A stretch of 64,000 nt of DNA, from positions 1 through 64,000 of the forward strand of contig NW_025766581.1 of the NCBI RefSeq assembly GCF_003918875.1, given 5' to 3'. A program made the position numbers and the translations under genes. The notes under the pieces are model-generated. The model was not told where the DNA came from and did no database searches. It worked only from the letters and a program-made list of their open reading frames with translations. Below, piece after piece: positions 7,974-64,000 of this stretch (its first letter is position 1; each line of letters starts with the position of its first letter). This stretch comes from Haliotis rubra. Taxonomy: Eukaryota.

Positions 7974-9368
7974 AAGTGTTCAGAAGTCAATCAATTTGAT
8001 TTATGATGATTCCAAATCGCATTACGTTCTTTCAAAACAATTGTTTGCACTGTGTATTATACTTTTTGTATTACTCCCCATAACATTTTAAGTTTTCAAT
8101 TTTGGGTTTTATAACACTGATATGAGTGCCTTTCTTTGGAAATTTTGTCCAATCACGGGAGGTGCCACCTCTACCAATTAGCAAGAGTTTACCTAATGGG
8201 CGACGACGTCTCCACTGCTGTATTTGGGAATATGAAGTTCAAATTCGAAAATTATGGGTAAAAGATGAAATAAAATACTCCAGTAGAGGTGCCCAGAGTG
8301 CTTGTTTCACGGACAGTCAGCAACAAAGGCCGATAAGCGCCCAACCGACATGAGCAGTTACGGAAAGGGGGCAGAGTTCAGCCGATTGTGACAAACCAGA
8401 CCGGATAACACAGCCAACCCGGAAGGTAGACTTCAAGTCATTACTTGTGATTTTCTTGTAGAGTGACGTATTGTCGGAACCTGATAACGGATACCAGTTA
8501 ATGTTTTGTCAAATGTTATTCAATATCTAAAGAGAAATATACCAGCGTTCCCAGATTACGTCTTTGGAATCCCGTGACCACATGAAGATTTAACGATGAA
8601 GGATTCTACTTTCTCTAATGCATTAAAACTGGTGTCCACTTGTTGATGTAACCTGCAGCATTAGAAGCTAACTGTATAATTCCAACATATATGGTATTGA
8701 CATTGACTGGTTCATAGAGTCAGTGTTCAGGTGTAATTTCGGTGAAGGTATCCGTTCAATCGTTCCTTCCTGCCGTGTTTTAAAGCGATACCTTACTACT
8801 GGTGGCTGGGGGCGTGGTCCATCATATGCATTGTGAGGTGTCTTGCCCACTTGAGAAGGTTCGATGATATCCGCGAGTGATTAGAAACTTGTCTTACAGG
8901 CTCCGAGTCATTGGCGGTGATCACGGAGGCTATATATCGATTTGTGTTTTCCAAACCTGAAGTGCATGTATCTGTAGCGGAATGTACGTTTTATTGAGAA
9001 CTTCCCTGTTAATATCCCATTCAATATTATAGACAGTCAGAGAAAATACTGTGTATATATCTTAATAGGGAACGGGGAGGCTAATCTCATGACATCATCA
9101 ACAGCGTTAGTAACAATATGGGATGGGGCTTGACGTTGTCCATAGTAACATGTCAGGACCATGTAGCTTCACATACATGGCAGAAGGATCGTCCTCCCCG
9201 ATGCTGTATGCATAAGTAACATCATCATGGACACTTGCCATATGTGTGTATGTATACTCACATAGATAGAGAGATAAGTAGATGAGCAGGAAGGGGTAGG
9301 TAGGTAGGTAGATAGATAGATGGATAAAGATTGTGTTAAACTAAAAGAACACAAGCTGCATGTTACCG

Positions 9369-44832: not shown

Positions 44833-46964
44833 ATGGCGACCGCCGGGCTAGAGAAGAAAGTAAAGGATAATTTCCTGACGTGCTCCATCTGCTTGGAGAT
44901 GTACACAGACCCGTGTACACTGAAGTGTGATCACACATTCTGCAGGAAATGTGTCACCTCATACATCCAAACCAGACCTGATGCTGTACAGTCCAAGACC
45001 ATCCCCTGTCCCTGCTGTCGACAAGACACCAAGGTCCCCCACCCCCGCAGGCCGGTGGAGGAGTGGGCTGGGCAGATCAAACCCAGCATCATTTTACAGG
45101 GGCTGATTGAAACCTATAGATCCGAGGTGGCTGTGCAAGGTAAAGTGAAAATATGATCCACGTGTGTGCGTGTGTGTATGTGTATGTATGTATTTAAAAC
45201 CAGTGGTAGACTTAACATTTACATCTGTGTGTGTTAAAAATACCCTGCTTTCTTGAGTGGCCTTTTCAAGTTGTGATGAAAATAAGAACGTGTGTACTTG
45301 TGTTTACAGAGACCTCGAGCACCTGTTGTATGATCTGTGAGCAACTAGGGGAGACAACACTAGGGGTCTTGTGGTGTCCTGAGTGTGAAGTGGCCCTCTG
45401 TGACAAATGTGTGAAGACACACCGGGTGACCCCTACTTTATTGAACCATGACCTATGTGACCTGTCGTCTAGGTCAAAGGTCAAACGGAGGATCATGTGT
45501 ACGGAACACAAGAGTAACCGTGTTGAGTTCCACTGTCAAGACTGTGGGAAGGCTGCCTGTCAGACATGTTGTATCATCTACCACAGAGCTTGTAAGACTG
45601 TCGTAACCATTGAGTCTATGAAGCCAGGGATGAAAGCAGCACTGATCGAGAAGAGACTTGGCATGGAGAAGAGACTGAAAGTGAGGTCGAAGAAAGTAGA
45701 CATAAAACACGAGTAGCTCCAAAGTAGTTCTAGAATCACAGAGTTAGCTGTTCAAAATATTAGGTTGATCTGCCAGACAGCGATTAACAAGATTAAACAG
45801 AAAGAATCACAACTGTTGGATGAACTGAATAACATATCACAGACATACGCCGACCAACTCCAAGCTGATGTGAAGCTGGAAGAGATCGATATGCAGATGT
45901 ACAGACAACATTGTGAGTTCATTGACCAGGCCTTGATATCGAACTGTGAGATGGACCTGTATGACGCGTATCAGGTCTGGGAATCTGGAGCTGTAGAAAT
46001 GGTGGGTGTCAGGGATACAGAGGCATCAGACACCCGGAGAATAGATGACATCAGGTTTATACCTAACACTTTCAGGGTCCAGGAGACCCTAGAAAAACTG
46101 CCGTTTGGGAAAATTGACGTCACATACCAGGGCACATGTCTACTGTCTCCAGTGCTGGGTGACACGATAGATGTGAGGGTGGAGAGTGATGAGATGAGCC
46201 CTGACTTAAGGTGCATAACAGTCCTGACTGTAGGTGATATACAGACACGTGTTGTCACTGACTTTTCTAACAACTGCCTGAAATCTCTGTACACTAGAGA
46301 CAATCATCCATGCCACAGTAAGCTTCCCCTGGATAACCCACCATCTGGGATAACACAGTTGAAGCAGAAGCAGGTAATGGTTGCTGTACCTTCGTCCCGC
46401 CAGATTGTAACAGTAGAAGTGACCCCCGACCTGGTGCTGCTCTCAACCATCCTAACTCGCAATAGTTACGACAGTCTGGCTGTTCTGAACCTTTCATCTC
46501 TGGCAGCAAGTGGCGAGGATTGTGATGGTTACGGCATTGTTGATATCCTTGACATGTCTGGACACCTGTTGAGGTCAATCAGTAAATACAATGGCGTCTC
46601 ACTGTTTGCCTACCCCTGGTACATGTGTGTCAACAACAAAGGCAACATACTCGTGTCTGACTGGGAACGTGAGTCTGTGACATGTCTGACGCAAGAGGGA
46701 GATGTTGTGTGGATACACGCCCCTACCGGTGACAGCGCCATTGGTTGCGCCTCTGGTATCACAACTACCAGCACAGGAGACATCCTGCTTGTAGACAGCC
46801 GCACTGACAAGGTGATACAGCTGGCAGAGTCGGGGGAGTTTGTCAGGGAGCTGCTCACGTTAGAAGATAGCGATGAGACAGGCATGTGCGATATATTCTG
46901 TGATAAATACGGTTTCTTATTTCTATGCACAGACACGGCAGTGAAAGAGTACGTGTTTGTCTGA
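44833..46964 (+). CDS. TRIM-NHL E3 ligase copy F; exons 44833-45139 and 45310-46964; 653 codons with a single in-frame TAG at 45714-45716
   Basis: All domains are present and ORFs 45231-45716 and 45765-46964 share one frame. AAG(K)>TAG relative to copies D and E; no frameshifts seen. Confidence 0.88.
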
Positions 46965-47217
46965 CATAAAACAAAAGAATGAAAGTTAGTGCAGAGCTGT
47001 GGTTTAAGCGTTTGTCACTTCACTGCTCGTGATCTACTGTACGTGGGGTTAGTCTGGAAATGTTTGTGTATTCACCAAAACGTATGAGCATCGCTTTGTC
47101 AGTGAATTGCAGACATGCAGTATTCAAACAGGTCATTTCCAGGATGAAGGGAAATAGTCCACATGATCACCAGGTGAAACACACCAGCTGTTGTGGAGAT
47201 TCCTTGGATGACCTGAG

Positions 47218-47566
47218 ATGACCATGGTGTAGTGGTAAGAGCGTCCACACGGAGAGCGGAAGGTCGCGGGTTCGATCCCTGACCGCGTCATACCAAAAGA
47301 CGTTAAAATATGGTACTTGTTGGTCCCTGTCTGGCGCTCGGCATTAATGGGTACAACAAGGACTGGTCAGCTAGGAGTCAGTATAATGTGTCTATGTGGG
47401 GTATTCATGCTTCACTGCGGCATGGTATCTCAGTGGGCTAGCACTATAAAACCAGCTTAAGTCTGGGCTAGTACAAGCAACCGCACATACACATACACAC
47501 GCATGCACGTCGTCATATGAGCGAAATATTCTCAAGCACGAAGTTGCCTAATTTCACCTCACCTCA
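47218..47566 (+). mobile_element. tRNA-derived SINE with a Meta/MESC-like central domain
   Basis: A box TGGTGTAGTGG, B box GGTTCGATCCC, core cgcgtcataccaaaagacgttaaaatatggtacttgttggtccctgtctggcgctcggcattaatggg...gtcagtataatgtgtc, (CACCT)n tail. Absent at the paralogous site ~63320. Confidence 0.8.
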
Positions 47567-48244
47567 ACTTGATCTCAACAGTGTGCTGAACCAGCTGAAG
47601 TTCAAAGAAACCCCATGCATGAAACCCTGGAGACATATATACATTGACTAATGTATGGATGGACTAGGACCACAGGAACTCTGAAACTGTTGGTCAGTTT
47701 TCGGAGTTTCTTCCTCATAGAATATTCAGTATCCATATAAACGATCTTCACCCAAACCTGATGATATAGCTTATATTGTCTAGTTGAGACATACCATATT
47801 CACTTAAAGGTCACTTCCAGCAACTAAATGGACCGCATGATGACTCGATGAAACACATCAGTGGTGATAGTGGTTGTACCTACACTTAGACAGGACAATA
47901 TGATCTTAACATAGTATGATAATGCACACCACTTATGGTTAAAAGCCGAGGCATGTGGTGAAAAGGAAACCTTACGTCTCTGCTCATTACTTGCGTGAAA
48001 CGCTGTCAACATAGAAAGGTGTATGGCATACGATCCAATAGTCTGTCTCAGTGTCTGTGAACCACATTTTGTCCCCTGTTGCTTAGCCCACCCTGTAATG
48101 CCAAAGCCATAAATGCACAAGTCTAGATTTCCTCAGGTCCAGGATCTCCCATCTCATCAGTGCTCCTTATCTAGTTAATGGACCAAAACTATTTTACTTC
48201 ACTTCATTCAATCTTGTGCTAGTTTATCACGAGTAAACCCAAGT

Positions 48245-48430
48245 ATGGAGAAGATTGAGGCGCGCAGTGTTATCAAGTTTTTGCACTTGAAGGGTTGCAC
48301 TTCTCGACAGATTCACGAGGAGATGAAATCTGTATTTTGTGAAGATATTATGATAGTGTTGTGAGATGGAAAAGGGATTTTCAAACCGGTCATATGCTAC
48401 TCACAGATGAGCCAAGAAGTGGACGCCGTT
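48245..48430 (+). mobile_element. Mariner transposase N-terminal (HTH) remnant
   Basis: MEKIEARSVIKFLHLKGCTSRQIHEEMKSV ... RWKRDFQTGHMLLTDEPRSGR is typical of mariner HTH domains; frameshifted and truncated. A scrambled paralog lies at 63775-64000. Confidence 0.85.
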
Positions 48431-48789
48431 TTGACGATATCAATGAGGTCATTCAAGAGGTGGGGTTGGTTTTCAATGAAATCAGGGGTTCTATTCAGGC
48501 GTCTGCACAAGGTCAAGAAATGTTAGGAGAACTCTGGATTGGGCCTATGTATATAGAAGTCTTAAGGACAAGAAATCAAGATAAAGTTTTTACCCTGAAT
48601 ACGTCTTGGTGATAATTAGAATTTTTTTATACCCTCTCGTAACTCAAGCAAGTGCTATGTGGATTAATTGAGCACTGTTCAAAGATTCATGACATATAGG
48701 CTATAGTTTTCATTTGAAAACAGACATTAGATAGTGGGATAGTTAGAATCACATCTTTCAAATGAATAGTTTACCCTCAGACATCATAT

Positions 48790-50720
48790 ATTCAACACAT
48801 AGTCGTTGTCCGTTAGCTAAGGCACCGGACGTCCTCTGTGTAGTACTTAAAACCCCATGAAGATCCGGGTTAGAAGTGATCTTCAGGAACCCATGCTTGT
48901 TCTAAGAGGCAAATAACGGGATCGGGTGGTCAGGCTAGCATGGTTGGCACATGTCAATCAGTCAAACAGTCCAATCTCACTAGGTGGGTACATTGTCACC
49001 TCATTCTCCTCTCAGCAGGAGAGTCGTCAAACGTCTCACCATGGTGGGTAGTCATACTTACATACTTACACTTCACTACCTGGGTTATAAGACTTGGACT
49101 GTAGGACCTTTATTTTTATACCTGTATTCTTACATTTTCTTATGGTTTGTTAGAAGCATGCTGTGTTTCACTTAAGCCGAGCCGTGAAGATCCGGGTTAG
49201 AATATTGATCTTCAATAATCCATGCTTGTCATAAGAGGGAACTAACGGGATCTGGTGGTCAGGCTCGCTGACTTGATTGACACATGTCATCGAATCCCAG
49301 CTGCGTAGACCGGTGCTCATGATGTTGACCACTGGATTGTCTGGTCCAGACTCGATTATTTACAGTATTCCGCCATATAACTGGAATATCGCTGAATTGA
49401 GCGTTAAACAAGAAACGAACAAGACAAAAGTAATTGCATCTCCACGACACCGGTGTACATGACAGTAGAATCCACTGAATTTCATTGGTCATCTTTCAAG
49501 ATGACCAGTATATCATATTTCATGAATGGGTTTCTCTGCCATTCCAAGTTTCATGCAAAGAGTGCAATGATTTCTAGTTATAAAATGGGGATCATTTCTT
49601 TCCATGGTCTTTTCTTGCCGACTGTTTCATGTTGTTAATCTGTTGTGTCCGGCATAATCAATCCACGAAGAGCTTATTCGATGTCATACATTGCGTTTGT
49701 AAATTCTCCACCATTCTCCAGTATGTTTTAGTTGTAGTATTTGGCATTTGTTTTGGGTCACTTAAATAAATACCGAAAAAGTGAAGAAATATTCCCCCAA
49801 CATTAGTGAACAGTGTTTGATGATGCTCATAAATGATTCCTCGTTTTCAAATAGAAATTGAGTTCATGATATCACCTCCCGGGATGTGCTGTCTAAACTA
49901 TCCTGTATGCAACTGTTCTGTTCCTACATAATCTGAAAATGTCAAACAACAAACGCGATGGAGCTGGAACTCCTGCTGTATTTCATAGAAATCCGTATAT
50001 TATTACTTTTTCCATATGAAAATACTTTTTACCCAGTTAAAGTTGTAATGCACGTGCAACACGATCACAGCCCGTGCTTGAACAATGAAAATTCAAGCAA
50101 ATTTCCATTGCCTTATCCGGACCATGAATGTAACCGTTTTGCCTAGTCTCGCTAGATGTCAAGGACCACGTTGCTAATCAGGCTGAAAAACGCCCTAACC
50201 TGAGTCAGAAACTATCATCGAAAACGAATAATTATCACAACTTGAACTCAGTTTGGATTGTCAGCTTATTATTGTCCTGGTGCCGTTACACAAAAAGCAC
50301 AAATGCCTTCTTTTTTAACAAAGCCAAATAGGATATTATGGATATATTTGTCTTGTTTCTTTTGTTCGGTTTCAGAATGAATATTAGACAATTTATGTCA
50401 TGCTCAAGAAATAAAAATGTTTCCACGTTTCGACGAAAGTCGACGACATACTGCCTTGAAAACGCAAATAATCCAAAGCAGCTCATCTGTTATGCTCCCG
50501 AAATGAAGTCAAACTATTGTTAAAGAATCACATGAATCAAAAGGCTCTTGGAGGAATTTAATGACGTGTATACCTTACGCTCTGTAGGTGATTCCCATCG
50601 ACATCGACATTCACAAAAGACAAGTGAACGAATATTGAGAAAGAAAATGTTGCCTCGGTTTAACGCCGGGTCAAATAAACTAGCAAACTCTCAAAAGTAA
50701 ATTTAATCTTTATCCCCGAA
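48790..50720 (-). repeat. Inverted copy of the inter-TRIM spacer
   Basis: For example, 50641 aagaaaatgttgcctc..tttaacgccgggtcaaa is the reverse complement of ~22755-22787; the block mirrors ~22720-23990 and ~57260-58140. Confidence 0.85.
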
Positions 50721-50912
50721 ACAACCCAGTTCGTTTATTTCTTGAGATGGATGACTACAGAACTATTGTGATACTGTGACCTTGGTGTTGATGTCTTGGT
50801 TGATATTCCTTTCGGGTTTCAAAAGTTTAATCCAGTTTGAAAAATCAACTTTAGAAAGATTAACAGGACAATGAATTCAACGGAAACGGAACAAAAACAA
50901 ACATGACATCAC

Positions 50913-51703
50913 ATGTCCGACTCATTAATGTGTCGAACCACTGTTGCCCTAAAGAATGACTTTCGAGAGACTGGCTACGTATTTGATATAATTATCCTTG
51001 ATGTTGAAGGCATCAAGACCATTGTTGTGTCCGACCTTCACAATACATCTGTGAAGTCCTTTTACGTTAGAAATGACAAATCTTGCCACAGTGAGTATGG
51101 CGTGGCCACACCTCATGATCTAACACACCTGGAACAAAACCAAGTGATGGTGTCGGCCCCCGATTCCTTCAGGATATCGATACTAGCTGTCACGCCTGAC
51201 CTCATTTGCCTCTCTGATATCAACACGTCGTTACATTGGCCTACGTATGTTAACCCCTTCCACGCTAGTAGGGTGTAAGTATGATACAGCAGCCATTGAT
51301 ATCCTGGACATGGAGGGGAAGGAACTCCAACTCGTTCTGTCTGGAAGTATTAAGGACAAAAGTATTTATAACAGGTTGTGTGTTTCAAGTACTCGTATCC
51401 AACTGGAATAGTAAGTCTCTCGTTTGCCTGACACCACAGGGAGATGCATTGTGGGAGCACTCCCCTGCTGAGAATGGGGAGTTCAGCAGACCCTTCCGTG
51501 TGAAGACTACCAGAACTTGGGAAATCCTTCTGGCAGACTATGAAACCAGCAGGGTGATCCAGCTGACCGAGTCTGGGCGGTTTGTCAAGGACATTCTTGT
51601 GCCTGAAGATGGACTGGCTTCTCCCACTGCATTGTATCTATACAATGAGAGACATTTATTTGTTGGTGTTGGTGGAGAAGTGAAGGAGTATCTTTTGCCC
51701 TAA
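50913..51703 (+). pseudogene. Divergent NHL/beta-propeller-only fragment of the same family, frameshifted
   Basis: DIIILDVEGIKTIVVSDLHNTSVKSFYVRNDKSCHS ... QVMVSAP ... VTPDL and VLVSNWNSKSLVCLTPQGDALW ... RVIQLTESGRFVKDIL ... VKEYLL align with the copy C-G propeller; disrupted at ~51230-51390. Confidence 0.82.
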
Positions 51704-52839
51704 ATGAACATAACAAGGAAAGTTAATATATGCCATCACACACTATATACGTTATTACAAGCATAAAACGTTGAGTGTTGCTTCATATTTTGTTGATTGT
51801 TTAACTAATTAATTTCTTTATGTATTTAGGCCTACGGTAGATCTTGTATTGTGTGTATGTGATGGTGTCGACATAGTGTTAAATCCTTCATATAACCTAC
51901 ATAATATACAGTCAACACTGTTGTGTCGAAGTTGAAGGGTTGTACGTAAATACTTCGAGTTATCCGAGCTTCGACATACATCATACGAAGGGACCAAACC
52001 TTTGCTTCGAGACAACCATGAGTTCGACACAACGTATTTGACTGTGCCATGTATTGACACTTCTGGAAAGTAATTTTAGATGTCGACTATACATTAAGTG
52101 ACTATTTTCTTTTGTTAGTATTACGATTTATTCCAGAATTATATTTTAGAGTCAGTCATAGGCCAGGATGTGTCTATCGGAGTCACATCTAGAAGGGAGG
52201 GCTTGAGGTCTGCTGACCTCATGTTAGTCTAAGCTGGTAACTAAGAGAGGTTATTTCGCACGTTATGTATTTGATGAGTTAGATTGTTGCGTCAATATCA
52301 ACGGAACAAAAACAAACATGACATCACATGTCCGACTCATCAATGTGCTAATGCGTTCACAGGCGTAAGAGTGGCATTGTAAATTTGCAAAGCTTTTCAT
52401 GTTTTGTTTGGGTTGTTTGTTTGTTGTTGTTTTTTTTCATTCTTCTATATTCTCTCCTAACCGTCGATTTATTTAAGTGCGGTTTGCATCGATATCAGCG
52501 TAATTCAGCAAATATTTTTAACTTGAACCCTGACTGTCAGTGACTCATGGATCACAGTCCTGGGTAGCTTGGTACAAGATATGTCCTATCAGTTTATCAG
52601 TAAGGGGGCGTTTTCCATTAAAGTAGGTCACACCGATGAAACCTGACCCGCTGTTAATCCCACTGACCACATCGCGTGTTGAGGATCTGAATACTGCGAG
52701 CACGCTGTGCACACTTGCCTTCAGTCTGACCAAGGTGTAAGTAGGTAAGTACATCACTTTCACGTTGACCCGTGAAGATCTGGGTTAGAATTGGTCTTCA
52801 ATAACCCATGTTTGTCGTAGGAGGTGACTAATGAGATCG

Positions 52840-52941
52840 GGGTGCCGTTGTACAAAACAACCTTAGCGCTAAGTCTACCTTATGTCTATGTTAAGGTATG
52901 GGAGTTACAGTCACCTAAGATCGCTTTGTACAACGGCACCC
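52840..52941. mobile_element. ~100-bp MITE nested inside a family-B repeat
   Basis: TIRs GGGTGCCGTTGTACAAA (52840-52856) and TTTGTACAACGGCACCC (52925-52941) interrupt the gatcgg|gtggtcaggctcgctgac segment of the host repeat. Confidence 0.8.
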
Positions 52942-53624
52942 GGATGGTCAGGCTCGCTGACTTGGCTGACCACATGTCATTGTATCATTCTATTAATTGT
53001 GTAACTTAGTTTATGTTCTAAAGTTTAGAACACGTGGCGTCAGTCTTTAAATGTATTATAACGGGACAGATCGAGTTTGTTTTGGACACGAATCTTTTAA
53101 CAAAAGGTAAATGAAAATCAAGCGGACCGAGGGCTACGGGAAAAGTATTTTTCTATTTCATGGGGGCTTGAATTTTCTCATGTGGGGGAATGGCGACATA
53201 GGAAAAACTTATTTTATGTCAGAACAAATATTCAGTGGGGGCTAGAGATCAGAAGTACAGAACAAAATAAATACAGCCTCAGTGGGATCTCCGTCTCGCT
53301 ATACACGTACAGGAGTTGAATGCATCAACATTACCATGCATGCACACAGTGGCACGAGATGATCATTCTGTGTACTACCCACGAAGATGGAATATTGCTG
53401 ATTCTGGCGTTAAACAACAAGCAAACAAACATTTTGCATACAGTAAGGTTGGTTTTCTTCCACAAATTTTAAGCGACCTCGGAAAGCTGAGCGCCCTATG
53501 CTTTACCTTAACCCTTTAGCAGTTGATGTAACTAATCGAAATACAGCAAGTAACGTGAATTACAACGTTTTTATAACTGATTTCATCATTGAAAGTAGTG
53601 TATTTTGTAGGCACCAGTGCAAAG

Positions 53625-55131
53625 ATGCCTCAAACTCGGTCCAGTCGCAAACGTGACCTCGGTAATCCAGCGATGGGGGTTGAAGTTAAGATGGGTCGAA
53701 TCAGAAGGAATCCCAAATTGCCAAGTGTTGGCAATTCAGAAACAAGTAAGCCGTCTCAACAATCCAACGACAGCGTCGCCATTACGACTCATCCCACGAC
53801 GTCAGACCTCAAGTGTGTCCTGGTGGACCAAGTGGAGTCGTTCTCCAAGGAGGTGGACAAACGGTCAGCGTACGTACAACATTAACAGAGAGTCGTTACG
53901 GAGGCCCGTGAACGCAAGGAATCCAATCAAGCTCGCATTGTGGAAATTGTCAAGGATGCCGTGGATATGATTAAGCACGAGGAAACGAAGCTGATGACAG
54001 AGCTGGATGAAATGACGGAGAAGCAGCTTCAGCAGCTGAATGATGAATTGCTGAAGGAGGAAGCAGACCTGTACAGGTTCCAACAACAATCTGACTTTAT
54101 CAACAAAGCTATGCAGGATGGTAATGGGGCGAATTGTCAGACTTTTCTGGAAGACTTGACGGACATTGGGGATGGGGCGAGCCAGGGGGATGTTGTTCGT
54201 TCAATAAACACAATCACTTTCAATCATGAATCTGAGAAAGTTGGCAAAGCCGTTGAGAACCTGCGCCTGGCGGAGGTTGATTTCACGTACCACGATAACC
54301 CCTTATATGTACCGGTGTTAGTGAACACGATCACCTACACATCTTTGAATGAGAAAGCCCGGGCTATAGATGCAACAGATGTCACTGTTCTCGATGTCGA
54401 TGGGTCGCAGGTACTTGTCGTCACCGATGATAGAAACAACCAACTGATATCTTTCTACACAAGACACAATGGGCCTTGCTATAGTGTTCTTCCACTGGAC
54501 CATTATCACCCGTGGGATTACACGTCTCACAGAGAACAGGGTGATAATAGCTCTACCAAAGATTGCCCAGCTTGTAACAGTAAAAGTGGCCCCTGAACTG
54601 ACCCTCCTGTCAAAAATCACCTGTAAGCGATATTACAACATGGCTGTTCTCAGCCCTTCATCTTTGGTAGCGGGGGGAGGTCAGCACGCTACTGGCTACT
54701 GTGTCGACGTCATTGACATGGAAGGCAATATATTGAGATCAATAACCGGCTCCCTCATCTACCACTCGGCTTACCTCTTCCTCAACAACAGTGGCAACAT
54801 CGTTGTGTCCGACAAAAGTACAAATTCAGTGTTTTGCATGACCCCCGATGGTGACGTGGTGTGGAAACACGACCCCAGCAGGAGCACGCCGTCAATTGGG
54901 TACCCTTTAGGGATCGTCCAGACCAACACCGGGGACGTCCTTGTGTCAGGAGAGAACGGCGGCAACAAGGTGATGCTTCTCACAGGGACCGGGGAGTTTG
55001 TCAGAGACGTCCTCACGGCGGACAATGGTCTTCAGACACCATCTGGACTGTGTCTTGATAAACGTGGTCATTTATTCGTATGTGACGGAAATCATATAAA
55101 AGAGTTTTCCTTCGCTGTACAGAAGCAGTGA
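53625..55131 (+). pseudogene. Divergent coiled-coil + NHL gene lacking RING/B-boxes in this exon; in-frame TAA at 53883-53885 and +1 frameshift at ~54506
   Basis: Acceptor ttttgtag ends at 53610 and ATG is at 53625. ORFs 53589 and 53940 share a frame. The coiled coil (IKHEETKLMTELDEM..LQ..EE..LYRFQQQSDFINKAM) and propeller (TVLDVDG..VVTD..NN..SFYTR..C.S.LPLD; GNIVVSD; GEFVRDVL; IKEFSF) are homologous to copies C-G. Confidence 0.85.
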
Positions 55132-55419
55132 TACCTACCTCGTCATGTGCGGGTCTTCGGTGTGACGAGCGATTGATTAACCCCTAGCCTACCCCACCGC
55201 CCCTCGTAAGTTATTGACATCAAGTGATGTAATGAATCTGATCAATCTCTCCCTCTCTCTCTCTCTCTCTCTACTTATATTGTAGACGTCCCGAAACACT
55301 TGTCCAGTTTCTACTGATAAATGATTCAAACTGTCGTTAATGGCAAATATTGCTTCGATGTCATGTTTAATGTGAACAAATAAATAAAGGTTTGTGTCAC
55401 CATCGAATGTGAGTATTGG

Positions 55420-57252
55420 TATTCTAACATCTCTGCTCATGAAACGCTGATAGCAAGGACATATGTATGACATTGGATCCAGCAGCACGTAAGAGTGGAG
55501 TAAGTTGTTGTATACAGAGCATGGACGTTTCTTCAGTATGATATCCTGTTTATTTGTTCTCTGGTGAGATTTTAAGTGAGTCCTCTGATTCAATCAAGAA
55601 TGACTTGACCTGCAACTATATATAGGAAATGTACTGTGAAGCAGAGAGAGAAAGAGTCAATTGCATCACACCTTTACGTTTCTTTGAATATTACATCACA
55701 GTAATCATGTTCATACTTTGCTGAAATATTTTCATCCAACCGAAAAACAGTCCATAAAGAATTAGATGTGCTTTAATTAATTATTGCAGTTTGCAGTTTG
55801 CAGTTTGCACACCTTTTTTCGATTCATAACTCAGTGAACCGAGAAAAAAGGAACTCCGTCAATCCTTCTGATTCAATTGTTCCGATAAAGATATCTACAA
55901 CACTTTCATAAAAACGCCCTATACATTAAAGCTGACAGAAAATACGAGAATGAATTCATACTGTGGCGTAACGTGTGTAAGGTTATTGTTGTTAATTTAT
56001 GCACATAACGCCAGTAGCCGATCAGCGGAGAGTAGCATAGGCCGACAGGACCCATCGATCACAGTGGGAGGCTAGCAGAACTACAAACGTCAGACTGGAA
56101 CGAACGAACAAACATGTCAGGAAGAAGGTTTCTATTTTACTTGAGATGGTCAGTAACTGCCAAATTCAAGCATTGGTTTCCTGAAAACGAGCGGACACAT
56201 TTAAAAAAATACTACTTGAGAATAGAACCCGAACACATGTTCTTCGTGTAACTCAAAATAAACATCAAGACAGCGAGCCTTCAGTTCCTGCAGGGATGTT
56301 AATGTATTCCTTTCTGTATCGAAAGATGGGTGAGTGATCCTGCATATAGATGAACATTGCCCAAATGCCCTGTAGACGATTGACACAGGTAAAAGGAAAG
56401 GGTTGGTTTGTTGTTTAAAGCTGCACTCAGCAATATTCCAGCTATATGGCGGCGGTTTGTAAATAATCGAGTCTGGACCAGACAATCCAGTGATCAACAG
56501 CATGAGCGTCGATCTTCGCAATTAGAATGACATTTTCGAACCAAGTCAGCGAGTCTGACTGCCCAACCGCCTCTTACGACAAGCATGGGTTGCTGAAAAT
56601 CAATTTTAACCGGATCTTCACGGATCAAACAAAAAGGGACTGGTCTCGATTGTAGCCGATATTCTCCAACAATCTATAGCAGTAAAAGTAGTCCGCTTTG
56701 GTCCGCTTTTCACATTCATTGGGAAATCAATGCAATAACACGTGACCAGTTCAGCCATAAGGAATTTAGTAACTGCAATGTACACAATGAAATTATTTTT
56801 TATCAAATTAACTAAGATCACAAATCATTATAAGGTTAGCACAGTAGTAGTACAGATTCAAACTCGGTAATAATAGAAGGGCAGTGATTACAGCAATGTG
56901 GTAATATTCACTTTCATCATCAATATTCCTGCTTGATTGGCATTTTAGAAAATGCTATTTGATGAATCTATGTTCATCAATATTCCTACTTGCAAGAAAT
57001 ACAGAGTTTCCAGGGTACAATGACCATCACACACAATGCTGAGACGAGAGGCAAGAGTTAGCTCCCCTCATATACCGAAGACGAAGACTCCAGTGGATTC
57101 TCCAATAACCTATGGGGTTTAACATATGTTATATTTGGGATTACACTTTCTTAGTAGAGTTCATATTCTAGTACTTTGGGGTGGGGGGGTGGGTGGGTTG
57201 AGTCCCATCCGGGACTCGAGCCCACATCCTCAGAGTCAGGCACCTAATCGCC
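55420..57252 (+). repeat. Segmental duplication of ~29848-32535
   Basis: Colinear high identity (attctaacatctctgctcatgaaac ... cagagtcaggcacctaatcgcc), minus the element inserted at 29937-30678. Confidence 0.88.
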
Positions 57253-60200
57253 TGATGGAATTTTCATTGTTCAAGCACGGACTGTGATCGTGTTGCACGT
57301 GCATTACAACTTTAACTGAGTAAAACGTATTTATATATGGAAAAAAGTAATAATATACGGATTTCTATGGCATATAGCAAGAACTTAAACTTCATCGTTT
57401 ATGTTCCATTTTAACTTTATGTTTGACATTATGTAGGAACCTAACAGTTGCAAACAGGAAAGCTGCAACATATAGTTTAGAACGCATACCTCGGGAGGTG
57501 ATATCATGAACTCAAACGAGCAATCATTTACCAACATCATAAGTGATGGGGGCATATTTAACTTTATCGGTAATTCTTTGCGTTACCCCAAAACAAATGC
57601 AAAACAGTACAACTAAAACATACTGGATAATTTACAAACGTAATTTATGACATTGAATATGCTCATCGTGGACTGATTTTATCGGACACAACACAAACAT
57701 GAAACATCCAGTAAGAAAAGGCCATGGAAAGAAATGATCACCATTTTATAACTAGAAATTAATTGCAGTCTGAGATTTGGAATGGCAGAGAAAACCATTC
57801 ATCTTATACCCTGATATGCGGATGATCTAATCGTCACCAATGTCACGGGGATGTAATTATTGTTGTCCTGTTTGTTTGTTTGTTTGTTGTTTAACACTCA
57901 ACTCAGCGATATTCCAGCTCTATGGCGGACTATTGTAAATAATCGAGTCTGGACCAGTCAATCCCGAGATCACCATCATGATAATCGATCTTGGCGATTG
58001 GGATACGATGACATGTGTCAACCTGTTAGTCGTCTCTTAGGACAAGTATGGGATCACTTCTAACCCGGATCTTCATGGGGTTTTAAGTACTACACAGAGG
58101 ACGTCCGATCCTGGCAACGACTATATGTTGACAATAGGAAGACTGAAGGTAAACTAATCATTTGAAAGATGTCTGATCTCTCCTTCTGGAAACAAAGAGA
58201 CTGCACAGAGAAAGAATACTTTATCACTAAGACATTAGTGGATCTTCAAACAATATTTACCTGTGTGAAACATACCTGTAGTCCTGACGCGTTCGCTACG
58301 TTCCGTTTTCCATACACAGAGAACAACACATAACTGCAGAAGGAAATAATGGCTTATACTTTCGATATGACATTTGACTTGCACATAAATAACTTGACTG
58401 TTGGAAGGTTGAAGACATCCTCTTGTTATAAAGTCGTGTGGAAAGTGTCATTCTAAATCTTTAGGGATAAATATACAGAGATGACACGTTTCACCGGCCT
58501 CGTGCATTTACAGTTCATTTGGGCAAAGGGAAGTGGAAGGGAACTAGCTATTTGGTGGCCATTGAATGATTTAAAATATCGCTCTACCTCAAGCTTAGGA
58601 TTTTTATCTTAAAAAAGAAAGTAAGCACATGCCGCTTCATCGGGAACTTTATAGGAAATGCATGCCGTTCAACTCTGGTTTGTGACACTTCAGTATTGCT
58701 GTGTGTGTTTTCTTCAGTCCTAAATTCATTAACAGTGCAGGAAAGAGTCTTGCAATAATGGAAGGGAGACAACACTACCGATATTATTTCGAGGTCCCAG
58801 CGAGCGGTGTTAATGTACTCCATAGAGGAAGTAAGCGCTTAAAAGAGGCTAAACAACATATACATGTTGAACAAGTGAACCGCTAGAGCGAGAGACACTG
58901 ACACATCGTGTACGTAGGGAGTGCTGCTCCGCCTGCACCTCGCCAGCAACAGCTGACATCAGTCTGCTAAACATGTTTCTCAATGTGGCTATGTCAATAT
59001 AACATTCCGAATAACTTTTTCCTCACTGTATTTTTTAAAATTAGAATTTGAATAACCAGGGTATTTTTTGTTCTCTTTGAATTAGTGCTCCGAGAAGTCA
59101 ATGGGAGTAACAGTTACAAAACATATGCATTTCTTGATTTTAAAAAACGGTTTGCAACATGTCATACTTTTTCAGACTTCCCATAAGATTCTAGCTGTTC
59201 GGGATTTTAAAACACTAAAATTATTGCCTTTGGTTGGAAAGTTTGTCGAGTGAAAGGAGGTGTCACCGTGCCAATTCATTACAAGAGTTAGCCTAATTTG
59301 AGAGAACGCATGTCCCAGAATCGATATTAAACTCAAATATAGTAGACAATTTGAGTTTGAAGAATAGAGTACTAAATTGTTTGAGCTCTTTTATTTTAAA
59401 AAGGCAGCCAAGTTAGAAATTCAGCTGTTTCAAATTGTAAAACTCAGTTTGAAATTGGAGTAAAAACTTAAATTTGTTTCGAGAAATCGGGTCCAGATAC
59501 AGCCTACAAATTCAGTATATGTGACCCATGTAATCACTAAGTAGGGAACACAGGGAGTGGGTGAAGGACAGGGAAATAATTGTAACAAGTATTGTTCATG
59601 TTGTTTCCAACTTTTTCTGAAAGTTGTTTTATGGGACATTTAATTTGTTTGGTACTTCAATGAAAATGTGATACTGTGTTGCTGCTGTGTAGATGCCCTG
59701 CGTCGACGTTTCCTTTGGGTTGTGTTGACAAATTACGTGAATTTCCTGTGAACGAGTGGGGCGAGTGGTGGCGAGTGGTGACGAATGCATAATATTATAC
59801 GGAAAAGGGCGAGTTCAACCGATTGTGACAAACCATGCTCGAGCACACAGCCAGCGGAAAGGTAGACTTTCTGAAGAGTACATGTTGTGAAACTAACCAC
59901 TCCTACTGGTATTGTGTTTTGTCTATTGTTATTCATTATCTAACAGAAGTCTACGAGTGTCAATACGTTTTGAAATCAGTGATAATAGTGAGAATTTAAC
60001 AGGGAAGTTGTCTACTTTCGTTATCACTATAAACGATGGCCTCGCGATGGTGTTGTAACATGCAGCAATGGAGCTAACTGGGTAAATCTAATTATACAAG
60101 GCTATTATCATTGACTGGTTCATTGAGTTGAAAATTTATCAGTGTTCAGGTGTTATTTCGGTGAAAGTATCCATTCAATCGTTCCTACTTCTGTGTTTTG

Positions 60201-60937
60201 TGCGACAACTTACTGTCTGTGGCTAGGGGGCGTGTCGAGCATGTGCATTGTGAGTGTTTGCCTTTGAAAGGGGTCGAGGTTATCCGTGAGTGAATAGATA
60301 ACATGTAATGCTCCAAGTCGTGGCGGTGCAGATATGTGTGTTGTGTTTGCCACGCCTGATCATCATGACAGGAATGTAGGTTTTGTCCGAACTTCCCTGT
60401 TAATATACTGTTCAATATAGACAGTCAGAGAAAACACTGTGTATACCTTAATAGGGAACGGGAAGGACAGTCCATGACATCATCACCAGTGTTAGTAATA
60501 ACATGGTGGGGCTCGACGTTGTCATAGTAACATGTCAGTCCAGGACCATGTAGCTGCATATATGGCCGAAGATGATGGGTGAAAACCTGGTCTCGATACT
60601 GTATGGTAGTAACATATTCCTGGACGACAATCAGCTGAGATTTCGACCATTGGCACGAATACGTTCCCAAAATTATTACGGATTTGCATGGTAAATAATA
60701 AGGTCAATAAGATGTCAGTGTTCCCAGTCTGACTGCTCAGATATAGATAGATAGATAGATGATAGACATGTAGATAGATATCTGTTTATATTTACTATGT
60801 GTCTGTGTGTGTGCGCGTGTTCGTGTACAGCTTCACATACAGATGCGCGTCTGTTCAGATTTTTCATTGCTGCTTGTACTGAATCTAAGTAATTTCTATT
60901 AAACTAAGAAGGCAGAAACTGCATGTGTATCTTGCAG

Positions 60938-63073
60938 ATGGCGACCGCCGGGCTAGAGAAGAAAGTAAAGGATAATTTCCTGACTTGCTCCATCTGCTTG
61001 GAGATGTACACAGACCCGTCTACACTGAGGTGTGATCACACATTCTGCAGGAAATGTGTCACCTCATACATCCAAACCAGACCTGATGCTGTACAGTCCA
61101 AGACCATCCCCTGTCCCTGCTGTCGACAAGACACCAAGGTCCCCCACCCCAGCAGGCCGGTGGAGGAGTGGGCGGGGCAGATCAAACCCAGCATCATTAT
61201 ACAGGGGCTGATTGACACCTATAGGTCCGAGGTGGCTGTGCAAGGTAAAGTGAAAATATGATATGCGTGTGTGCGTGTGCCTGCGTGTGTGTGTGTGTAT
61301 TTAAAACCAGTGGTAGACATAACATTGACATATGTGTGTGTAAACAAATACCCTGCTTCCATTCGTAGCCTTTTCAAATTGCGATGAAAACATGTACATA
61401 TGTACTTGTTTTACAGGGACCTCAAGCACCTGTTGTACGATCTGTCAGCAACTAGGGGAAACAACTCCAGGGGCCTTGTGGTGTGCTGAGTGTGAAGTGG
61501 CCCTCTGTGACAAATGTGTGAAGATACACCGAGTGACACCGAATTCATTGAACCATGACCTGTGTGATCTGTCGTCTAGGTCAAAGGTCAAACGGAGGAT
61601 CAAGTGTACGGAACACAAGAGTAACCGTGTTGAGTTCCACTGTCAAGACTGTGGGAAGGCTGCCTGTCAGACATGTTGTATCATATACCACAGAGCTTGT
61701 AAGACTGTCGTCACCATTGAGTCTATGAAGCCAGGGATGAAGGCAGCACTGATGGAGAAGAGACTTGGCATGGAGAAGAGACTGAAAGTGAGGTCAAAGA
61801 AAGTAGACATACGAAACGAGAAACTCGAAAGTAGTTCTAGAATCACAGAGTCAGCTGTTCAAAATATAAGGTTGATCTGCCAGACAGCGATTAACAAGAT
61901 TAAACAGAAGGAAACACAACTCTTGGATGAACTGAATACCATATCACAGACATACGCCGACCAACTCCAAGCTGATGTGAAGCTGGAAGAGATCGAGATG
62001 CAGATGTACAGACAACACTGTGTGTTCATTGACCATGCCTTGGTATCGGACTGTGAGATGGACCTGTATGACGCGTATCAGGCCTGGGAGTCTGGAGCTG
62101 TAGAGATGGAGGATGTCAGGGATACAGAGGCAGCAGACACCCGGAGAATAGCTGAGATCAGGTTTATACCTAACACTTTCAGGGTCCTGAAGACCCTAGA
62201 TAAACTGCAGTTTGGGAAAATTGGGGTCACATACCAGGGCACATGTCTACTGTCTCCAGTGCTGGTTGACACGATAGATGTGAGGGTGGAGAGTGATAAG
62301 ATGAGCCCTGTCTTAAGGTGCATAACAGTCCTGGCTGTAGATGATATACAGACATGTGTTGTCACTGACTGTTATAACAATTGCCTGAAATCTTTGTACA
62401 TTAGAGACAATCATCCATGTCACAGTAAACTTCCCCTGGATAACTCACCATTTGGGATGACACAATTGAAGCAGAAGCAGGTGATGGTTGCTGTCCCTGA
62501 ATCCCGCCAGATTGTAACGGTAGAGGTGACCCCCTGACCTGATGCTGCTCTCAACCATCCTCACTAACAATACTTACTACAGTCTGGCTGTTCTGAACTT
62601 TTCATCTCTGGCAGCAGGTGGCAAGGATTGTCATGGTTACGGTATTGTTGAAATCCTGGACATGTCTGGACACGTGTTGAGGACAATCACTGCACACAAT
62701 GATGTCTCACTGTTTACCTACCCCAGGCACATGTGTGTCAACAACAAGGGCAACATACTCGTGTCTGACTGGGGGAACAAGACTGTGACATGTCTGACGT
62801 CCGAGGGGGATGTTTTATGGAGATACAACCGTACCGGAGACAAGCCACTCAGCTACCCTCGTGGTATCACAACTACCACTACAGGAGACATCCTGGTTGT
62901 AGATAGGAACACAGACAAGGTGATACAGCTGACAGAGTCGGGGGGAGTTTGTCAGTGAACTGCTCACGTTAGAAGATGGCGATCAGACAGGCATGTGCGA
63001 TATATTTTGTGATAAATACGGTTTCTTATTTCTATGCACAGACACGGAAGTGAAAGAGTACGTGTTTGTCTGA
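60938..63073 (+). CDS. TRIM-NHL E3 ligase copy G; exons 60938-61244 and 61417-63073; two +1 homopolymer frameshifts (C5 at 62530-62534, G6 at 62940-62945)
   Basis: All domains are present and the intron is canonical. Correcting both runs gives 653 aa, the same length as copy F. Confidence 0.88.
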
Positions 63074-64000
63074 CATAAAAATCAAAAGAATGAAAGTCAG
63101 TGCAGAGCTGTGGTTTAAGCGTTTGTCACTTTACTGCTCGTGATCTACTGTACGTGGGGTTAATCTGGAAATGTTTGTGTATTCACCAAAACGTATGGGC
63201 ATAGCTTTGTCGGTGAATTGCAGACATGCAATATTCAAATAGGTCGTTTCCAGCAAGAAGTGAAAAAGTCCACCAGGTGAAACACACCAGCTGTTGTGGA
63301 GATTCCTGGGATGACCTGAGCTACACAACGACTACTTGATCTCAACAGTGTGCTGAACCAGCTGAAGTTCAAAGAAACCCCATGCATGAAACCCAGGAGA
63401 CATATATACATTGACTAATGTATGGATGGACTAGGACCACAGGAACTCTGAAACTGTTTGTCAGTTTTCGGAGTTTCTTCCTCATAGAATATTCAGTATC
63501 AATATACACGATCTTCACCCAAACCTGATGATATAGCTTATATTGTCTAGTTGAGACATACCATATTCACTTAAAGGTCATTTTCAGCAATTAAATGGAC
63601 CGCATGATGACTCGGTGAAACACATCAGTGGTGATAGTGGTTGAACCTATACCTAGACAGGACAATATGATCTTAACATAGTATGATAATGCATACCACT
63701 TATGGTTAAAAGCCGAGACATGTGGTGAAAAGGAAACCTTACGTCTCTGCTCATGATCATGACTTGCGTGAAACGCGCGCGCAGTGTTATCAACTTAGAA
63801 AGGTGTATGGCATACGATCCAGTAGTCTCAGTGTCTGTGAAACGTCCCCTGTTGCGCGCAGTGCCAAAGTTATCAAGTTTTGCACTTGAAGGGTTGGCAC
63901 TATTTACTTCTTCACAGAGTTTATCACGAGGAGATAAAATCTGTATATTGCACTTGAAGACTTCTCAGATTCACGAGGAGATAAAATCTGTATATTGTGA

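What the first reader, a model, noticed from the sequence alone, without database searches (positions are those of the whole stretch)
44833..63073. Propeller domains are mosaics: blade-scale shuffling by gene conversion or unequal crossover
F and G share the linker and first blades (IPNTFRV..TL.KL.FGKI.VTYQGTCLLSPVL.DTIDVRVESD.MSP.LRCITVL; ..DC.GYGIV) that differ from C and E. Later, G switches to the C/D/E type (VLWRYNRTGDK; SYPRGIT and EDGD.TGM, as in D) while F has a unique VVWIHAPTGDSAIGCASG. D has a C/E-type linker but the F/G-type MCVNNKGN segment. In exon 1, D and E end EEDVQ while C, F and G end EVAV(P/Q). These conflicting groupings imply segmental exchange that creates new combinations of variable loops.
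Basis: partly seen in the sequence, partly recalled or inferred. Interest (0 to 1): 0.75.

Follow-up and report, generated by a model that had tools for sequence, protein, structure and literature searches.

The report
Mosaic abalone TRIM-NHL gene array
Neighbouring copies of an abalone-specific family of RING/B-box/NHL-propeller genes have swapped pieces of sequence by gene conversion and unequal crossover, which is the usual behaviour of tandem gene arrays, and every copy in this window carries a stop or frameshift, so no functional gain is shown.

Summary
The window holds a tandem array (A-G plus two divergent relatives) of RING, B-box, coiled-coil and six-bladed NHL propeller genes from a Haliotis species about 5% diverged from H. 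rubra.

A single tree does not fit:
- The PHI test gives z=-17.
- Topology tests per segment reject the global tree.
- Synonymous divergence jumps between segments. F-G dS runs 0.12, then 0.35, then 0.10.

G carries F-type blades 1 to 4a. It then has a 250-390 bp D-like patch (62756/62774 to 63007/63143) covering blades 4b to 6, and F-type 3'UTR after that. Forcing G to group with F in the patch costs 16-18 lnL (pAU 0.002-0.006).

Three other points bear on the reading:
- F's "unique" segment is 98-99% identical to its H. rubra ortholog, so it is ancestral.
- C and E share a 7.5-kb block at 94-99% identity.
- D is an out-of-register fusion of two paralog lineages.

One cited conflict, MCVNNKGN in D, is simply the family-majority state.

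Exchange tracts run from about two blades to whole genes and are not blade-periodic. Every copy from B to G has a stop or frameshift in this assembly. Only short contigs were available, so G's mosaic is not verified by reads.

This is ordinary concerted and mosaic evolution in a new family.

The parts
44833..45139 (+). Copy F, exon 1 (RING finger; ends ...SEVAVQ, donor AG|GTAAAG)
   Evidence: Pfam zf-RING_UBOX and zf-C3HC4, E 3e-10. Exon end placed from the alignment and from G's splice.
45310..46964 (+). Copy F, exon 2 (two B-boxes, coiled coil, disordered linker, six-bladed NHL propeller). In-frame TAG at 45714-45716.
   Evidence: Pfam B-box and NHL. AF2 model has pLDDT above 94 for the propeller. 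Foldseek matches the TRIM2/TRIM3 NHL domain at TMt 0.78-0.81. The TAG is absent from all other copies and from the H. rubra ortholog. Collinear with H. rubra L001 15834-19274 at 94.8%.
46031..46647 (+). F: deep 'F/G-type' lineage segment (linker, blades 1-3, first half of blade 4)
   Evidence: F-G identity 87-95% against 62-88% (mostly below 80%) to C, D and E. Clade (F,rF,G,rP1) has UFBoot 100 on a branch of 0.197. dS between the types is 0.31-0.34.
60938..61244 (+). Copy G, exon 1 (RING). The codon at 61019-61021 is TCT (Ser) where all other copies have a zinc-ligand Cys.
   Evidence: Reading frame across the exon junction checked.
61245..61416 (+). G intron 1 (GT..AG)
   Evidence: A contig of run X7 (guessed to be RNA) joins 61242 to 61415 with GT..AG ends. 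The frame across the joint reads ...EVAVQ|GTSSTCC.
61417..63073 (+). Copy G, exon 2. One-base frameshifts in the C run 62530-62534 and in the G run 62940-62945.
   Evidence: ORFs break at 62537 and 62958. Both runs are one base longer than in every H. rubra homolog.
62138..62755 (+). G: F/G-type segment (linker to first half of blade 4)
   Evidence: Coordinates mapped.
62774..63007 (+). G: conversion patch of C/D/E type, closest to D (minimum extent; maximum 62756-63143). It covers the last strand of blade 4, blade 5 and at least half of blade 6.
   Evidence: The block holds 38 D-type against 6 F-type sites; no one of 20000 permutations reached this. The ML tree puts G with D, and forcing G with F/rF costs 15.9-18.4 lnL, pAU 0.002-0.006. 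dS is 0.345 for F-G against 0.121 for G-D. Blades mapped.
63118..63181 (+). G 3'UTR, F-type again (shares a 23-bp stretch with F and B that is missing in C, D and E)
   Evidence: FG sites at F 47033-47070. (F,rF,G) has UFBoot 99 in 46801-47100. Alignment.
18990..21127 (+). Copy C (exon 1 18990-19296, exon 2 19484-21127). One-base frameshift in the C run 20597-20601. The 5' part is G-like and the propeller is E-like.
   Evidence: The H. rubra ortholog L003 5548-11181 matches window 15290-20977 at 95.5% and lacks the frameshift.
26729..29272 (+). Copy D, a fusion gene. The 5' half runs through blades 1-2 (D1, 27793-28267; 93-94% to H. rubra rP5/rX over linker and blade 1, 90-92% over the rest). 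It is joined at 28260-28284 to a C/D/E-type 3' half that restarts in the coiled coil (D2, from 28273). It also has TAA at 27274-27276 and a one-base insertion in the G run 29004-29009.
   Evidence: Alignment. TRF finds a 485-bp unit in 2.0 copies at 85%. D1 affinities. Lesions.
36026..38466 (+). Copy E, a pseudogene. Lesions: TGA at 36212-36214, a 19-bp deletion at 36259, an insertion of about 400 bp in intron 1, a one-base deletion near 37649 and a one-base insertion in the G run 38198-38203. Its propeller is 97-100% identical to C.
19352..26363 (+). Block shared with 36688-44026 at 94-99% identity (C intron 1 to upstream of D equals E intron 1 to upstream of F). Both ends lie inside genes.
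   Evidence: Self-BLAST. The DF split in the upstream region 44757-44804.
36688..44026 (+). Second copy of the 7.5-kb block
   Evidence: The stretch 22061-24108 against 39555-41598 is 98.7% identical, higher than the 95.5% between C and its H. rubra ortholog.
9331..11460 (+). Copy B, a heavily decayed pseudogene of the same family with many small indels
26..1362 (+). Copy A, a partial copy (coiled coil to propeller) cut by the window edge. It is 67-80% identical to the others.
50913..51703 (+). Divergent NHL-propeller fragment between F and G, in two ORFs
   Evidence: No Pfam hit at E<=0.01. The sequence resembles blades of the family.
53940..55131 (+). Second divergent coiled-coil plus NHL gene between F and G. 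Its two ORFs overlap, which indicates a frameshift.
   Evidence: Pfam NHL at 2e-08. Weak DNA match to F 46269-46507.

Best explanation
The interval belongs to a tandem array of lineage-specific abalone (Haliotis) genes. Each encodes a RING finger, two B-boxes, a coiled coil and a six-bladed NHL beta-propeller, which is a TRIM-NHL-type E3 ligase architecture. The copies are mosaics because paralogs in the array recombine with one another.

Shown:
1. A short gene-conversion tract in G of 250-390 bp, running from the last strand of blade 4 to blade 6. It is copied from a D-like paralog into an F-like gene and is flanked on both sides by F-type sequence.
2. A long exchange or duplication of about 7.5 kb that makes C exon 2 through D's upstream region nearly identical to E exon 2 through F's upstream region. 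Its ends lie inside genes, so C/E and D/F are chimeric relative to their 5' ends.
3. An out-of-register fusion, D, that joins two paralog lineages.
4. The RBCC half and the 3' end are kept similar between all copies (dS about 0.03-0.14). The linker plus blades 1-3 retain deep lineages (dS about 0.34) that are also present in H. rubra.

Inferred:
- Exchange is homology-driven. It starts and ends in conserved stretches, such as the NKGN(I/L)LVSD strand motif where G's patch begins.
- Differences concentrate in propeller loops, so exchange reshuffles loop combinations.
- In this window all copies carry stops or frameshifts, so here the process acts largely on pseudogenes or on assembly-damaged genes.
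For: Domains and fold. The family is abalone-specific and large, with 190 Haliotis hits and named orthologous clusters.

Incongruence:
- Site splits cluster along the gene.
- PHI z=-17.
- AU tests on eight consecutive segments: the global tree loses 33.4, 3.7, 8.2, 10.0 (B-box 7.9 plus coiled coil 2.1), 0, 0, 7.5 and 1.2 lnL, about 64 in total.
- Triplet tests: no one of 20000 permutations reached the observed value.
- With H. rubra taxa added, the F/G-type clade (F, rF, G, rP1) has support 100 in 46031-46600. G groups with D in 46601-46800, and the constraint of G with F is rejected at pAU 0.002-0.006. The clade (F, rF, G) has support 99 in 46801-47100.

Synonymous sites follow the topology.

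Not an assembly chimera for F and C. F exon 2 plus its flank is collinear with an independent H. rubra assembly at 94.8% over 3.4 kb. C plus its upstream region is collinear at 95.5% over 5.7 kb.

Structural events.

Loop bias: 26-39% of loop residues differ against 15-25% of strand residues, and family entropy is 1.67 against 1.07 bits.
Against: - G's mosaic has no independent confirmation. No H. rubra ortholog of G was in the three loci fetched. The public runs are held only as 100-250 bp contigs that cannot span a breakpoint.
- No in-window donor is identical to G's patch. D is 91-94% identical there, so the true donor is elsewhere or the event is old.
- Some of the conflicts are weakly supported on their own. 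For exon 1, the B-box and coiled-coil segments and the 3' end the pAU is 0.08-0.34.
- Four of the frameshifts are +1 changes in homopolymer runs and may be assembly errors. The pseudogene status of C and G is therefore uncertain.
Confidence: 0.8

Rival explanations
1. Assembly or polishing artefact. Paralogs or haplotypes were collapsed or mis-polished, so G's patch, the near-identity of C and E, and the frameshifts are products of assembly and not of biology.
For: - Two N gaps lie just upstream of D and F.
- Four frameshifts are +1 changes in homopolymer runs that are absent from all H. rubra homologs.
- Contigs one G shorter at 62940 exist in all four runs laid.
- G's patch lies where many near-identical paralog contigs pile up, with depth 5-20 times that of the neighbouring F/G-type segment.
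Against: - F and C are collinear with an independent assembly of another species at a uniform 95%.
- G's patch is flanked on both sides by F-type sequence, which needs a double switch within 400 bp. It is identical to no copy in the window (91-94% to D), which is not what a misjoin or over-polishing with a neighbour's reads would give.
- C, D and E share a derived indel at the same G run, +3 in C and +1 in D and E. This looks like real history.
- D's two repeat units differ by 15%.
Confidence: 0.1
2. No exchange. The conflicting groupings arise from shared ancestral states, uneven rates and diversifying or convergent selection on propeller loops along one duplication tree.
For: - MCVNNKGN in D, F and G is the family-majority state.
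- The CE|DFG split is compatible with the global tree.
- dN/dS is higher in the propeller (0.6-0.8) than in the RBCC half (0.3-0.6).
- Differences are enriched in loops.
Against: - Synonymous divergence changes about threefold between adjacent segments for the same pair of genes. F-G runs 0.117, then 0.345, then 0.10. G-D runs 0.308, then 0.121.
- Incompatible splits (DG against FG, CG/DF against CE/FG) are spatially clustered, with PHI z=-17.
- The constraint of G with F is rejected in the patch.
- Non-coding flanks show the same switches.
Confidence: 0.05
3. A dedicated diversification system. Decayed copies act as donor cassettes whose blades are copied into a few expressed TRIM-NHL genes to generate a recognition repertoire.
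For: - Many disrupted copies sit beside a large expressed family.
- Variation is concentrated in the loops.
- There are deep lineages of blades 1-3 shared across species.
- An RNA-like contig shows that family members are spliced.
Against: - There is no sign of a special mechanism. The tracts also cover the promoter, the intron and the UTR.
- The recipient seen here, G, is itself disrupted.
- Overall dN/dS is below 1.
- There is no expression or somatic data.
Confidence: 0.05

Closest known systems
TRIM-NHL proteins (TRIM2, TRIM3, TRIM32, TRIM71/LIN-41, Brat, Thin/Wech)
   Same: The domain order is RING, B-box, coiled coil, then a C-terminal six-bladed NHL propeller. The best sequence and fold matches in the PDB are the NHL domains of TRIM2 and TRIM3.
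   Different: - Sequence identity to the solved NHL domains is only about 14-18%.
- There is no filamin/Ig domain between the coiled coil and the propeller. The linker is predicted to be disordered.
- The genes are a large tandem expansion specific to Haliotis, not single conserved developmental regulators.
Tandem TRIM clusters of vertebrates that evolve by duplication, gene conversion and positive selection: the TRIM5/6/22/34 cluster, primate chromosome 11 TRIM 'reservoir' genes, and fish finTRIM/btr. Papers PMC2151084, PMC3228819 and PMC3137616 were seen only as titles and abstracts.
   Same: These are lineage-specific tandem expansions of RBCC ligases. The N-terminal half is conserved, the C-terminal recognition domain is variable, and there is exchange and birth-and-death among neighbours.
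   Different: The variable module here is an NHL propeller and not B30.2/SPRY. The host is a mollusc. The immune role is only an analogy. Oyster TRIM genes are candidate loci for herpesvirus resistance (PMC9437489).
Concerted evolution and interlocus gene conversion in multigene arrays in general (MHC, KIR, globins, plant NLR clusters; from general knowledge)
   Same: - Short conversion tracts of a few hundred bp flanked by the original sequence.
- Hybrid genes from unequal crossover.
- Homogenised constant parts alongside old variable lineages.
- Many pseudogenes.
   Different: Nothing mechanistic differs. This is a new family and taxon for the same process.

Membership tests
TRIM / RBCC family | N-terminal RING finger | tested here: met
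   Pfam zf-RING_UBOX at 3.2e-10 and zf-C3HC4 at 1.2e-09 on F exon 1. In G one zinc-ligand Cys is replaced by Ser.
TRIM / RBCC family | One or two B-box zinc fingers after the RING | tested here: met
   Pfam zf-B_box at 2.2e-07, above its cut-off. ANCHR-like B-box at 1.2e-05, 25.8 bits, just under its 27-bit cut-off.
TRIM / RBCC family | Coiled coil following the B-boxes | tested here: met
   The AF2 model has a continuous helix at residues 2-58 of the F ORF starting at 45765, directly after the B-box region. No coiled-coil predictor was run.
TRIM-NHL subfamily | C-terminal six-bladed NHL beta-propeller | tested here: met
   Pfam NHL repeat at 1.5e-07. The model has 24 strands in six blades with pLDDT above 94. 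Foldseek top hits are the NHL domains of TRIM3 and TRIM2, E about 1e-13, TMt 0.78-0.81.
TRIM2/TRIM3/TRIM71 orthology group | Filamin/Ig domain between the coiled coil and the NHL domain | tested here: not met
   There is no filamin hit in Pfam. Residues 75-124 are predicted to be disordered. The NCBI names given to the homologs ('TRIM2-like', 'TRIM71-like', 'wech-like', 'TRIM56-like') are inconsistent with one another.
Interlocus gene conversion | Adjacent segments of one gene have significantly different phylogenies | tested here: met
Interlocus gene conversion | The switch is seen at synonymous and non-coding sites, not only in amino acids | tested here: met
   dS per segment. The upstream region, the intron and the UTR show the same switches.
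Interlocus gene conversion | A short tract flanked on both sides by the recipient's own lineage | tested here: met
   G is F-type at 62138-62755, D-type at 62774-63007, and F-type again at 63118-63181.
Interlocus gene conversion | An identifiable donor copy | tested here: inconclusive
   The closest copy in the window is D at 91-94%. The H. rubra protein P0002 is 88-90% identical. No near-identical donor was found in the sequence available.
Interlocus gene conversion | The mosaic is present on single DNA molecules (not an assembly artefact) | tested here: inconclusive
   The runs are held only as Logan contigs of 100-250 bp. F and C are backed by collinearity with the H. rubra assembly. G is not.
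Unequal crossover / non-allelic recombination in a tandem array | Hybrid genes and duplicated blocks whose ends lie inside genes | tested here: met
   D is a fusion with its junction at 28260-28284, and its two units are 85% alike. The 7.5-kb block runs from intron 1 of C/E to the 5' end of D/F. Array layout differs from H. rubra: F's upstream flank matches the flank of rP1, while F's body matches rF, and rP1 and rF lie about 56 kb apart.

The most novel reading that the evidence does not exclude
The abalone TRIM-NHL arrays might work as a germline cassette system. Deep, trans-specific lineages of blades 1-3 would be recombined with alternative blades 4-6, partly from decayed donor copies, to build a repertoire of propeller-based recognition modules for innate immunity. 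That would be an NHL-propeller analogue of B30.2-TRIM or pseudogene-templated diversification.
Probability: 0.07. Interest if true: 0.7.

Novelty: new member of a known kind. Interest (0 to 1): 0.33.

Why it matters
The finding documents, with formal tests and an outgroup species, how a large mollusc-specific TRIM-NHL expansion evolves. The ligase half is homogenised, the first propeller blades keep old lineages, and the last blades are exchanged by short conversion tracts. This is useful background for anyone annotating abalone immune-type gene families or using these genes as markers, because orthology cannot be assigned gene by gene. It does not reveal a new mechanism. The copies in this window look non-functional, so no claim about new binding specificities follows.

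Tried and rejected
- Read check. The look-up of sequencing runs gave 15 holders with at most 37% of the words, all stored as Logan contigs. Read laying on 59900-63900 returned only pieces of 100-250 bp, so no breakpoint could be bridged and the homopolymer frameshifts could not be settled.
- A loose end at 62288 that continues as C/E-type sequence is just another paralog sharing a conserved stretch of about 30 bases. It is not a recombinant.
- A majority-consensus lesion scan gave spurious stops where the two linker types differ by a 6-bp indel. I replaced it with direct ORF and alignment inspection.
- The first iqtree run failed and the standard bootstrap was slow, taking about 64 s for one short segment. 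I used AU tests and UFBoot instead.
- Look-ups for the loci of P0002 and P0008 found nothing on record, so G's possible donor or ortholog could not be examined as DNA.
- The search of earlier findings returned nothing for this place or for these words.
- Literature searches found no paper on TRIM-NHL expansion or conversion in abalone.
- I considered D to be a simple internal tandem duplication. I now prefer fusion of two lineages, because D1 is 93-94% identical to the H. rubra rP5/rX type but only 82-89% to D2.

Full report
WHAT IS THERE

The window is a tandem array of one gene family on the + strand:
- A: a partial copy at 26-1362.
- B: a decayed copy at about 9331-11460.
- C: 18990-21127.
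- D: 26729-29272.
- E: 36026-38466.
- F: 44833-46964.
- Two divergent NHL genes at 50913-51703 and 53940-55131.
- G: 60938-63073.

Each unit has a RING exon, an intron of about 170 bp, and one large exon. The large exon encodes two B-boxes, a coiled coil, a disordered linker and an NHL propeller (Pfam). A contig of run X7, guessed to be RNA, joins 61242 to 61415 with GT..AG ends. This fits the intron I place at 61245-61416.

An AlphaFold model of the F ORF 45765-46964, built with 94 Haliotis homologs, has mean pLDDT 85.5 and above 94 over residues 125-399. It shows 24 strands in six blades. Its best structural matches are the NHL domains of TRIM3 and TRIM2, with TMt 0.78-0.81. These are also the best sequence matches in the PDB.

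The word search found 190 proteins, all from Haliotis (rubra, rufescens, cracherodii, asinina). They carry inconsistent 'TRIM2/3/36/56/71-like, wech-like' names and mostly sit on one chromosome or contig per species. None is identical to a window ORF. Orthologous DNA of H. rubra is about 95% identical. The window therefore comes from another abalone species close to H. rubra.

CHECK OF THE OBSERVATION

In 120-bp windows:
- F and G are 87-95% identical over F 46020-46560, where both are mostly below 80% to C, D and E.
- At 46620-46740, G drops to 75-79% against F and rises to 93-94% against D.
- In the 3'UTR, F and G are 96% alike again.
- Upstream of exon 1, G is 95-96% like C, and F is 92-94% like D.

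Among 175 biallelic 2|3 sites the supported split changes in blocks along the gene. The PHI statistic is 0.199 against 0.355 +/- 0.009 for shuffled site order, which is z=-17, and 0 of 2000 permutations reached it.

A likelihood comparison of all 15 five-taxon trees in eight consecutive segments shows that the global best tree (CE)(FG) is not the best in six of them. It loses about 64 lnL in total, although branch lengths were free in every segment.

Triplet scans give sharp blocks. G(F,D) has 38 D-type against 6 F-type sites in 46666-46987. C(E,G) has 82 G-type against 10 E-type sites up to 45365, and then 186 E-type against 13 G-type. In each case no one of 20000 permutations reached the observed value.

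OUTGROUP TEST

I fetched three H. rubra loci.
- L001 15834-19274 matches window 45337-48750 at 94.8%. This is F's ortholog, called rF here.
- L003 5548-11181 matches window 15290-20977 at 95.5%. This is C's ortholog, called rC here.

The architectures of F and C therefore exist in an independent assembly of another species and are not chimeras. F's supposedly unique VVWIHAPTGD... segment is 98-99% identical in rF and 97% identical in protein P0010. It is the original partner of the F/G-type blades.

With the H. rubra genes added:
- Segment 46031-46600 gives a clade (F, rF, G, rP1) with support 100 on a long branch.
- Segment 46601-46800 puts G with D inside the C/D/E group. Forcing G to join F and rF costs 15.9-18.4 lnL (pAU 0.002-0.006).
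- Segment 46801-47100 gives (F, rF, G) with support 99.

G is therefore an F-like gene with an internal D-like patch.

rP1 (protein P0001) shares the F/G-type first blades but has a third, divergent type in 46601-46800. This part of the propeller has thus been replaced more than once.

SELECTION OR EXCHANGE

Synonymous divergence per segment, in the order RBCC, S5, S67, S8:

| Pair | RBCC | S5 | S67 | S8 |
|---|---|---|---|---|
| F-G | 0.13 | 0.117 | 0.345 | 0.10 |
| G-D | 0.123 | 0.308 | 0.121 | 0.031 |
| F-C | 0.083 | 0.344 | 0.356 | 0.032 |

Selection on amino acids cannot do this, and non-coding flanks show the same switches. dN/dS is 0.3-0.6 in the RBCC half and 0.6-0.8 in the propeller, and never clearly above 1. 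Differences are commoner in loops (26-39%) than in strands (15-25%), and family-wide entropy is 1.67 against 1.07 bits.

OTHER EVENTS

Shared block. The stretch 19352-26363 matches 36688-44026 at 94-99%. It runs from intron 1 of C and E, through exon 2 and the whole intergenic region, to the upstream region of D and F. Part of it (98.7%) is more alike than the C-rC orthologs (95.5%), so at least part of the exchange is younger than the species split. E's exon 1 is a decayed, unrelated-looking 5' end. C's 5' end is G-like.

D as a fusion. D contains a 485-bp unit twice, at 85% identity. The first unit is 93-94% identical to the H. rubra rP5/rX type over linker and blade 1, and only 82-89% identical to the second unit. 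D is therefore best read as an out-of-register fusion of two paralog lineages, with its junction at 28260-28284.

Difference from H. rubra. F's upstream flank (43312-44494) matches the flank of rP1 at 93%, whereas F's body matches rF. In H. rubra those two lie about 56 kb apart. The array has been rearranged between the species.

Exon 1 dimorphism. The EEDVQ/EVAV difference is three changes within four bases. Both forms occur among H. rubra paralogs.

SCALE

The F/G-type lineage covers the linker, blades 1-3 and the first half of blade 4 (residues about 90-296 of the model). G's patch starts just after the conserved NKGNILVSD strand of blade 4 and runs through blade 5 and at least half of blade 6. 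Tracts thus range from about two blades to 7.5 kb. Their ends are not at blade boundaries, and exchange is as evident in the promoter, exon 1 and the intron as in the propeller. 'Blade-scale shuffling' overstates the modularity.

CODING STATE

- F has one TAG, at 45714-45716.
- C has a one-base insertion in a C run (20597-20601).
- G has a one-base insertion in a C run (62530-62534) and another in a G run (62940-62945). It also has Ser in place of a RING cysteine (61019-61021).
- D has TAA at 27274, the fusion, and a one-base insertion in a G run.
- E has TGA at 36212, a 19-bp deletion, a one-base deletion and the same G-run insertion as D.
- B is riddled with indels.

None of these lesions is present in the H. 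rubra homologs. The four +1 homopolymer changes could be assembly errors, but the substitutions and rearrangements cannot easily be explained that way.

At the D/E G run, C has +3 where D and E have +1. This points to a real, shared history.

F-rF dN/dS is about 1 in the RBCC half and S5, as expected for a pseudogene.

READS

Only Logan contigs were available. Laid on 59900-63900, they are 100-250 bp long and cannot bridge a breakpoint. They show three things:
- G's F/G-type segment exists in three DNA runs at low summed depth, while the conserved parts and the patch pile up 5-20 times deeper. This fits a large family.
- No indel is reported at 62530-62534.
- Contigs one G shorter at 62940 exist in all four runs, but these may come from paralogs.

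G's mosaic therefore remains unverified by independent molecules.

WHAT WAS LEFT OUT

No N stretch was filled. Exon 1 and the start of exon 2 of G were joined once in a script, only to check the reading phase at the junction.

VERDICT

The process is the ordinary one for tandem arrays. The family (an abalone TRIM-NHL expansion) is a new example of it. A functional reshuffling of binding loops is not demonstrated, because all local copies are disrupted.

Noticed in passing
window 20597-20601, 29004-29009, 38198-38203, 62530-62534, 62940-62945: Five frameshifts are +1 changes in C or G homopolymer runs that are absent from all H. rubra homologs. This may signal homopolymer errors in the assembly. 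At the D/E site, C has +3 instead of +1, which restores the frame.
   Followed up: partly
window 48751-50728 versus L001 19281-21283: About 2 kb downstream of F is inverted relative to the H. rubra contig (93.7% identity on the minus strand).
   Followed up: no
window 50913-51703 and 53589-55131: Two much more divergent NHL-propeller genes lie between F and G. Neither has a RING or B-box ORF nearby, and both are split into two ORFs. The flank downstream of the second (55452-56878) is 90-97% identical to the flank downstream of D (30688-32235).
   Followed up: partly
window 36330-36690: E carries an insertion of about 400 bp in intron 1 that no other copy has. It sits exactly at the left end of the 7.5-kb block shared with C. 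It could be a mobile element or a recombination junction.
   Followed up: no
window 4505-5364: A tandem array of an 86-bp unit, 10 copies at 74% match, in the A-B intergenic region.
   Followed up: no
window 26364-26545 and 44495-44636: Both N gaps sit at the same relative place, just upstream of D and F, next to (GATA)n/(GACA)n and (GT)n microsatellites that precede exon 1 in every copy. (GT)n also sits in intron 1.
   Followed up: no
L001 9800-12250 and 15834-17741 (H. rubra): The NCBI model for P0010 appears to splice exon 1 of a truncated F-like copy (rT, which lacks the coiled coil to blade 4) to exon 2 of the next copy (rF), which has no exon 1 of its own. A stretch of about 2 kb resembling the upstream region of B lies between them.
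   Followed up: partly
window 61242-61415 (run X7): An RNA-like contig shows intron 1 spliced out, but X7 has no depth over G's copy-specific segment 62178-62713. The transcript is probably from another paralog.
   Followed up: partly
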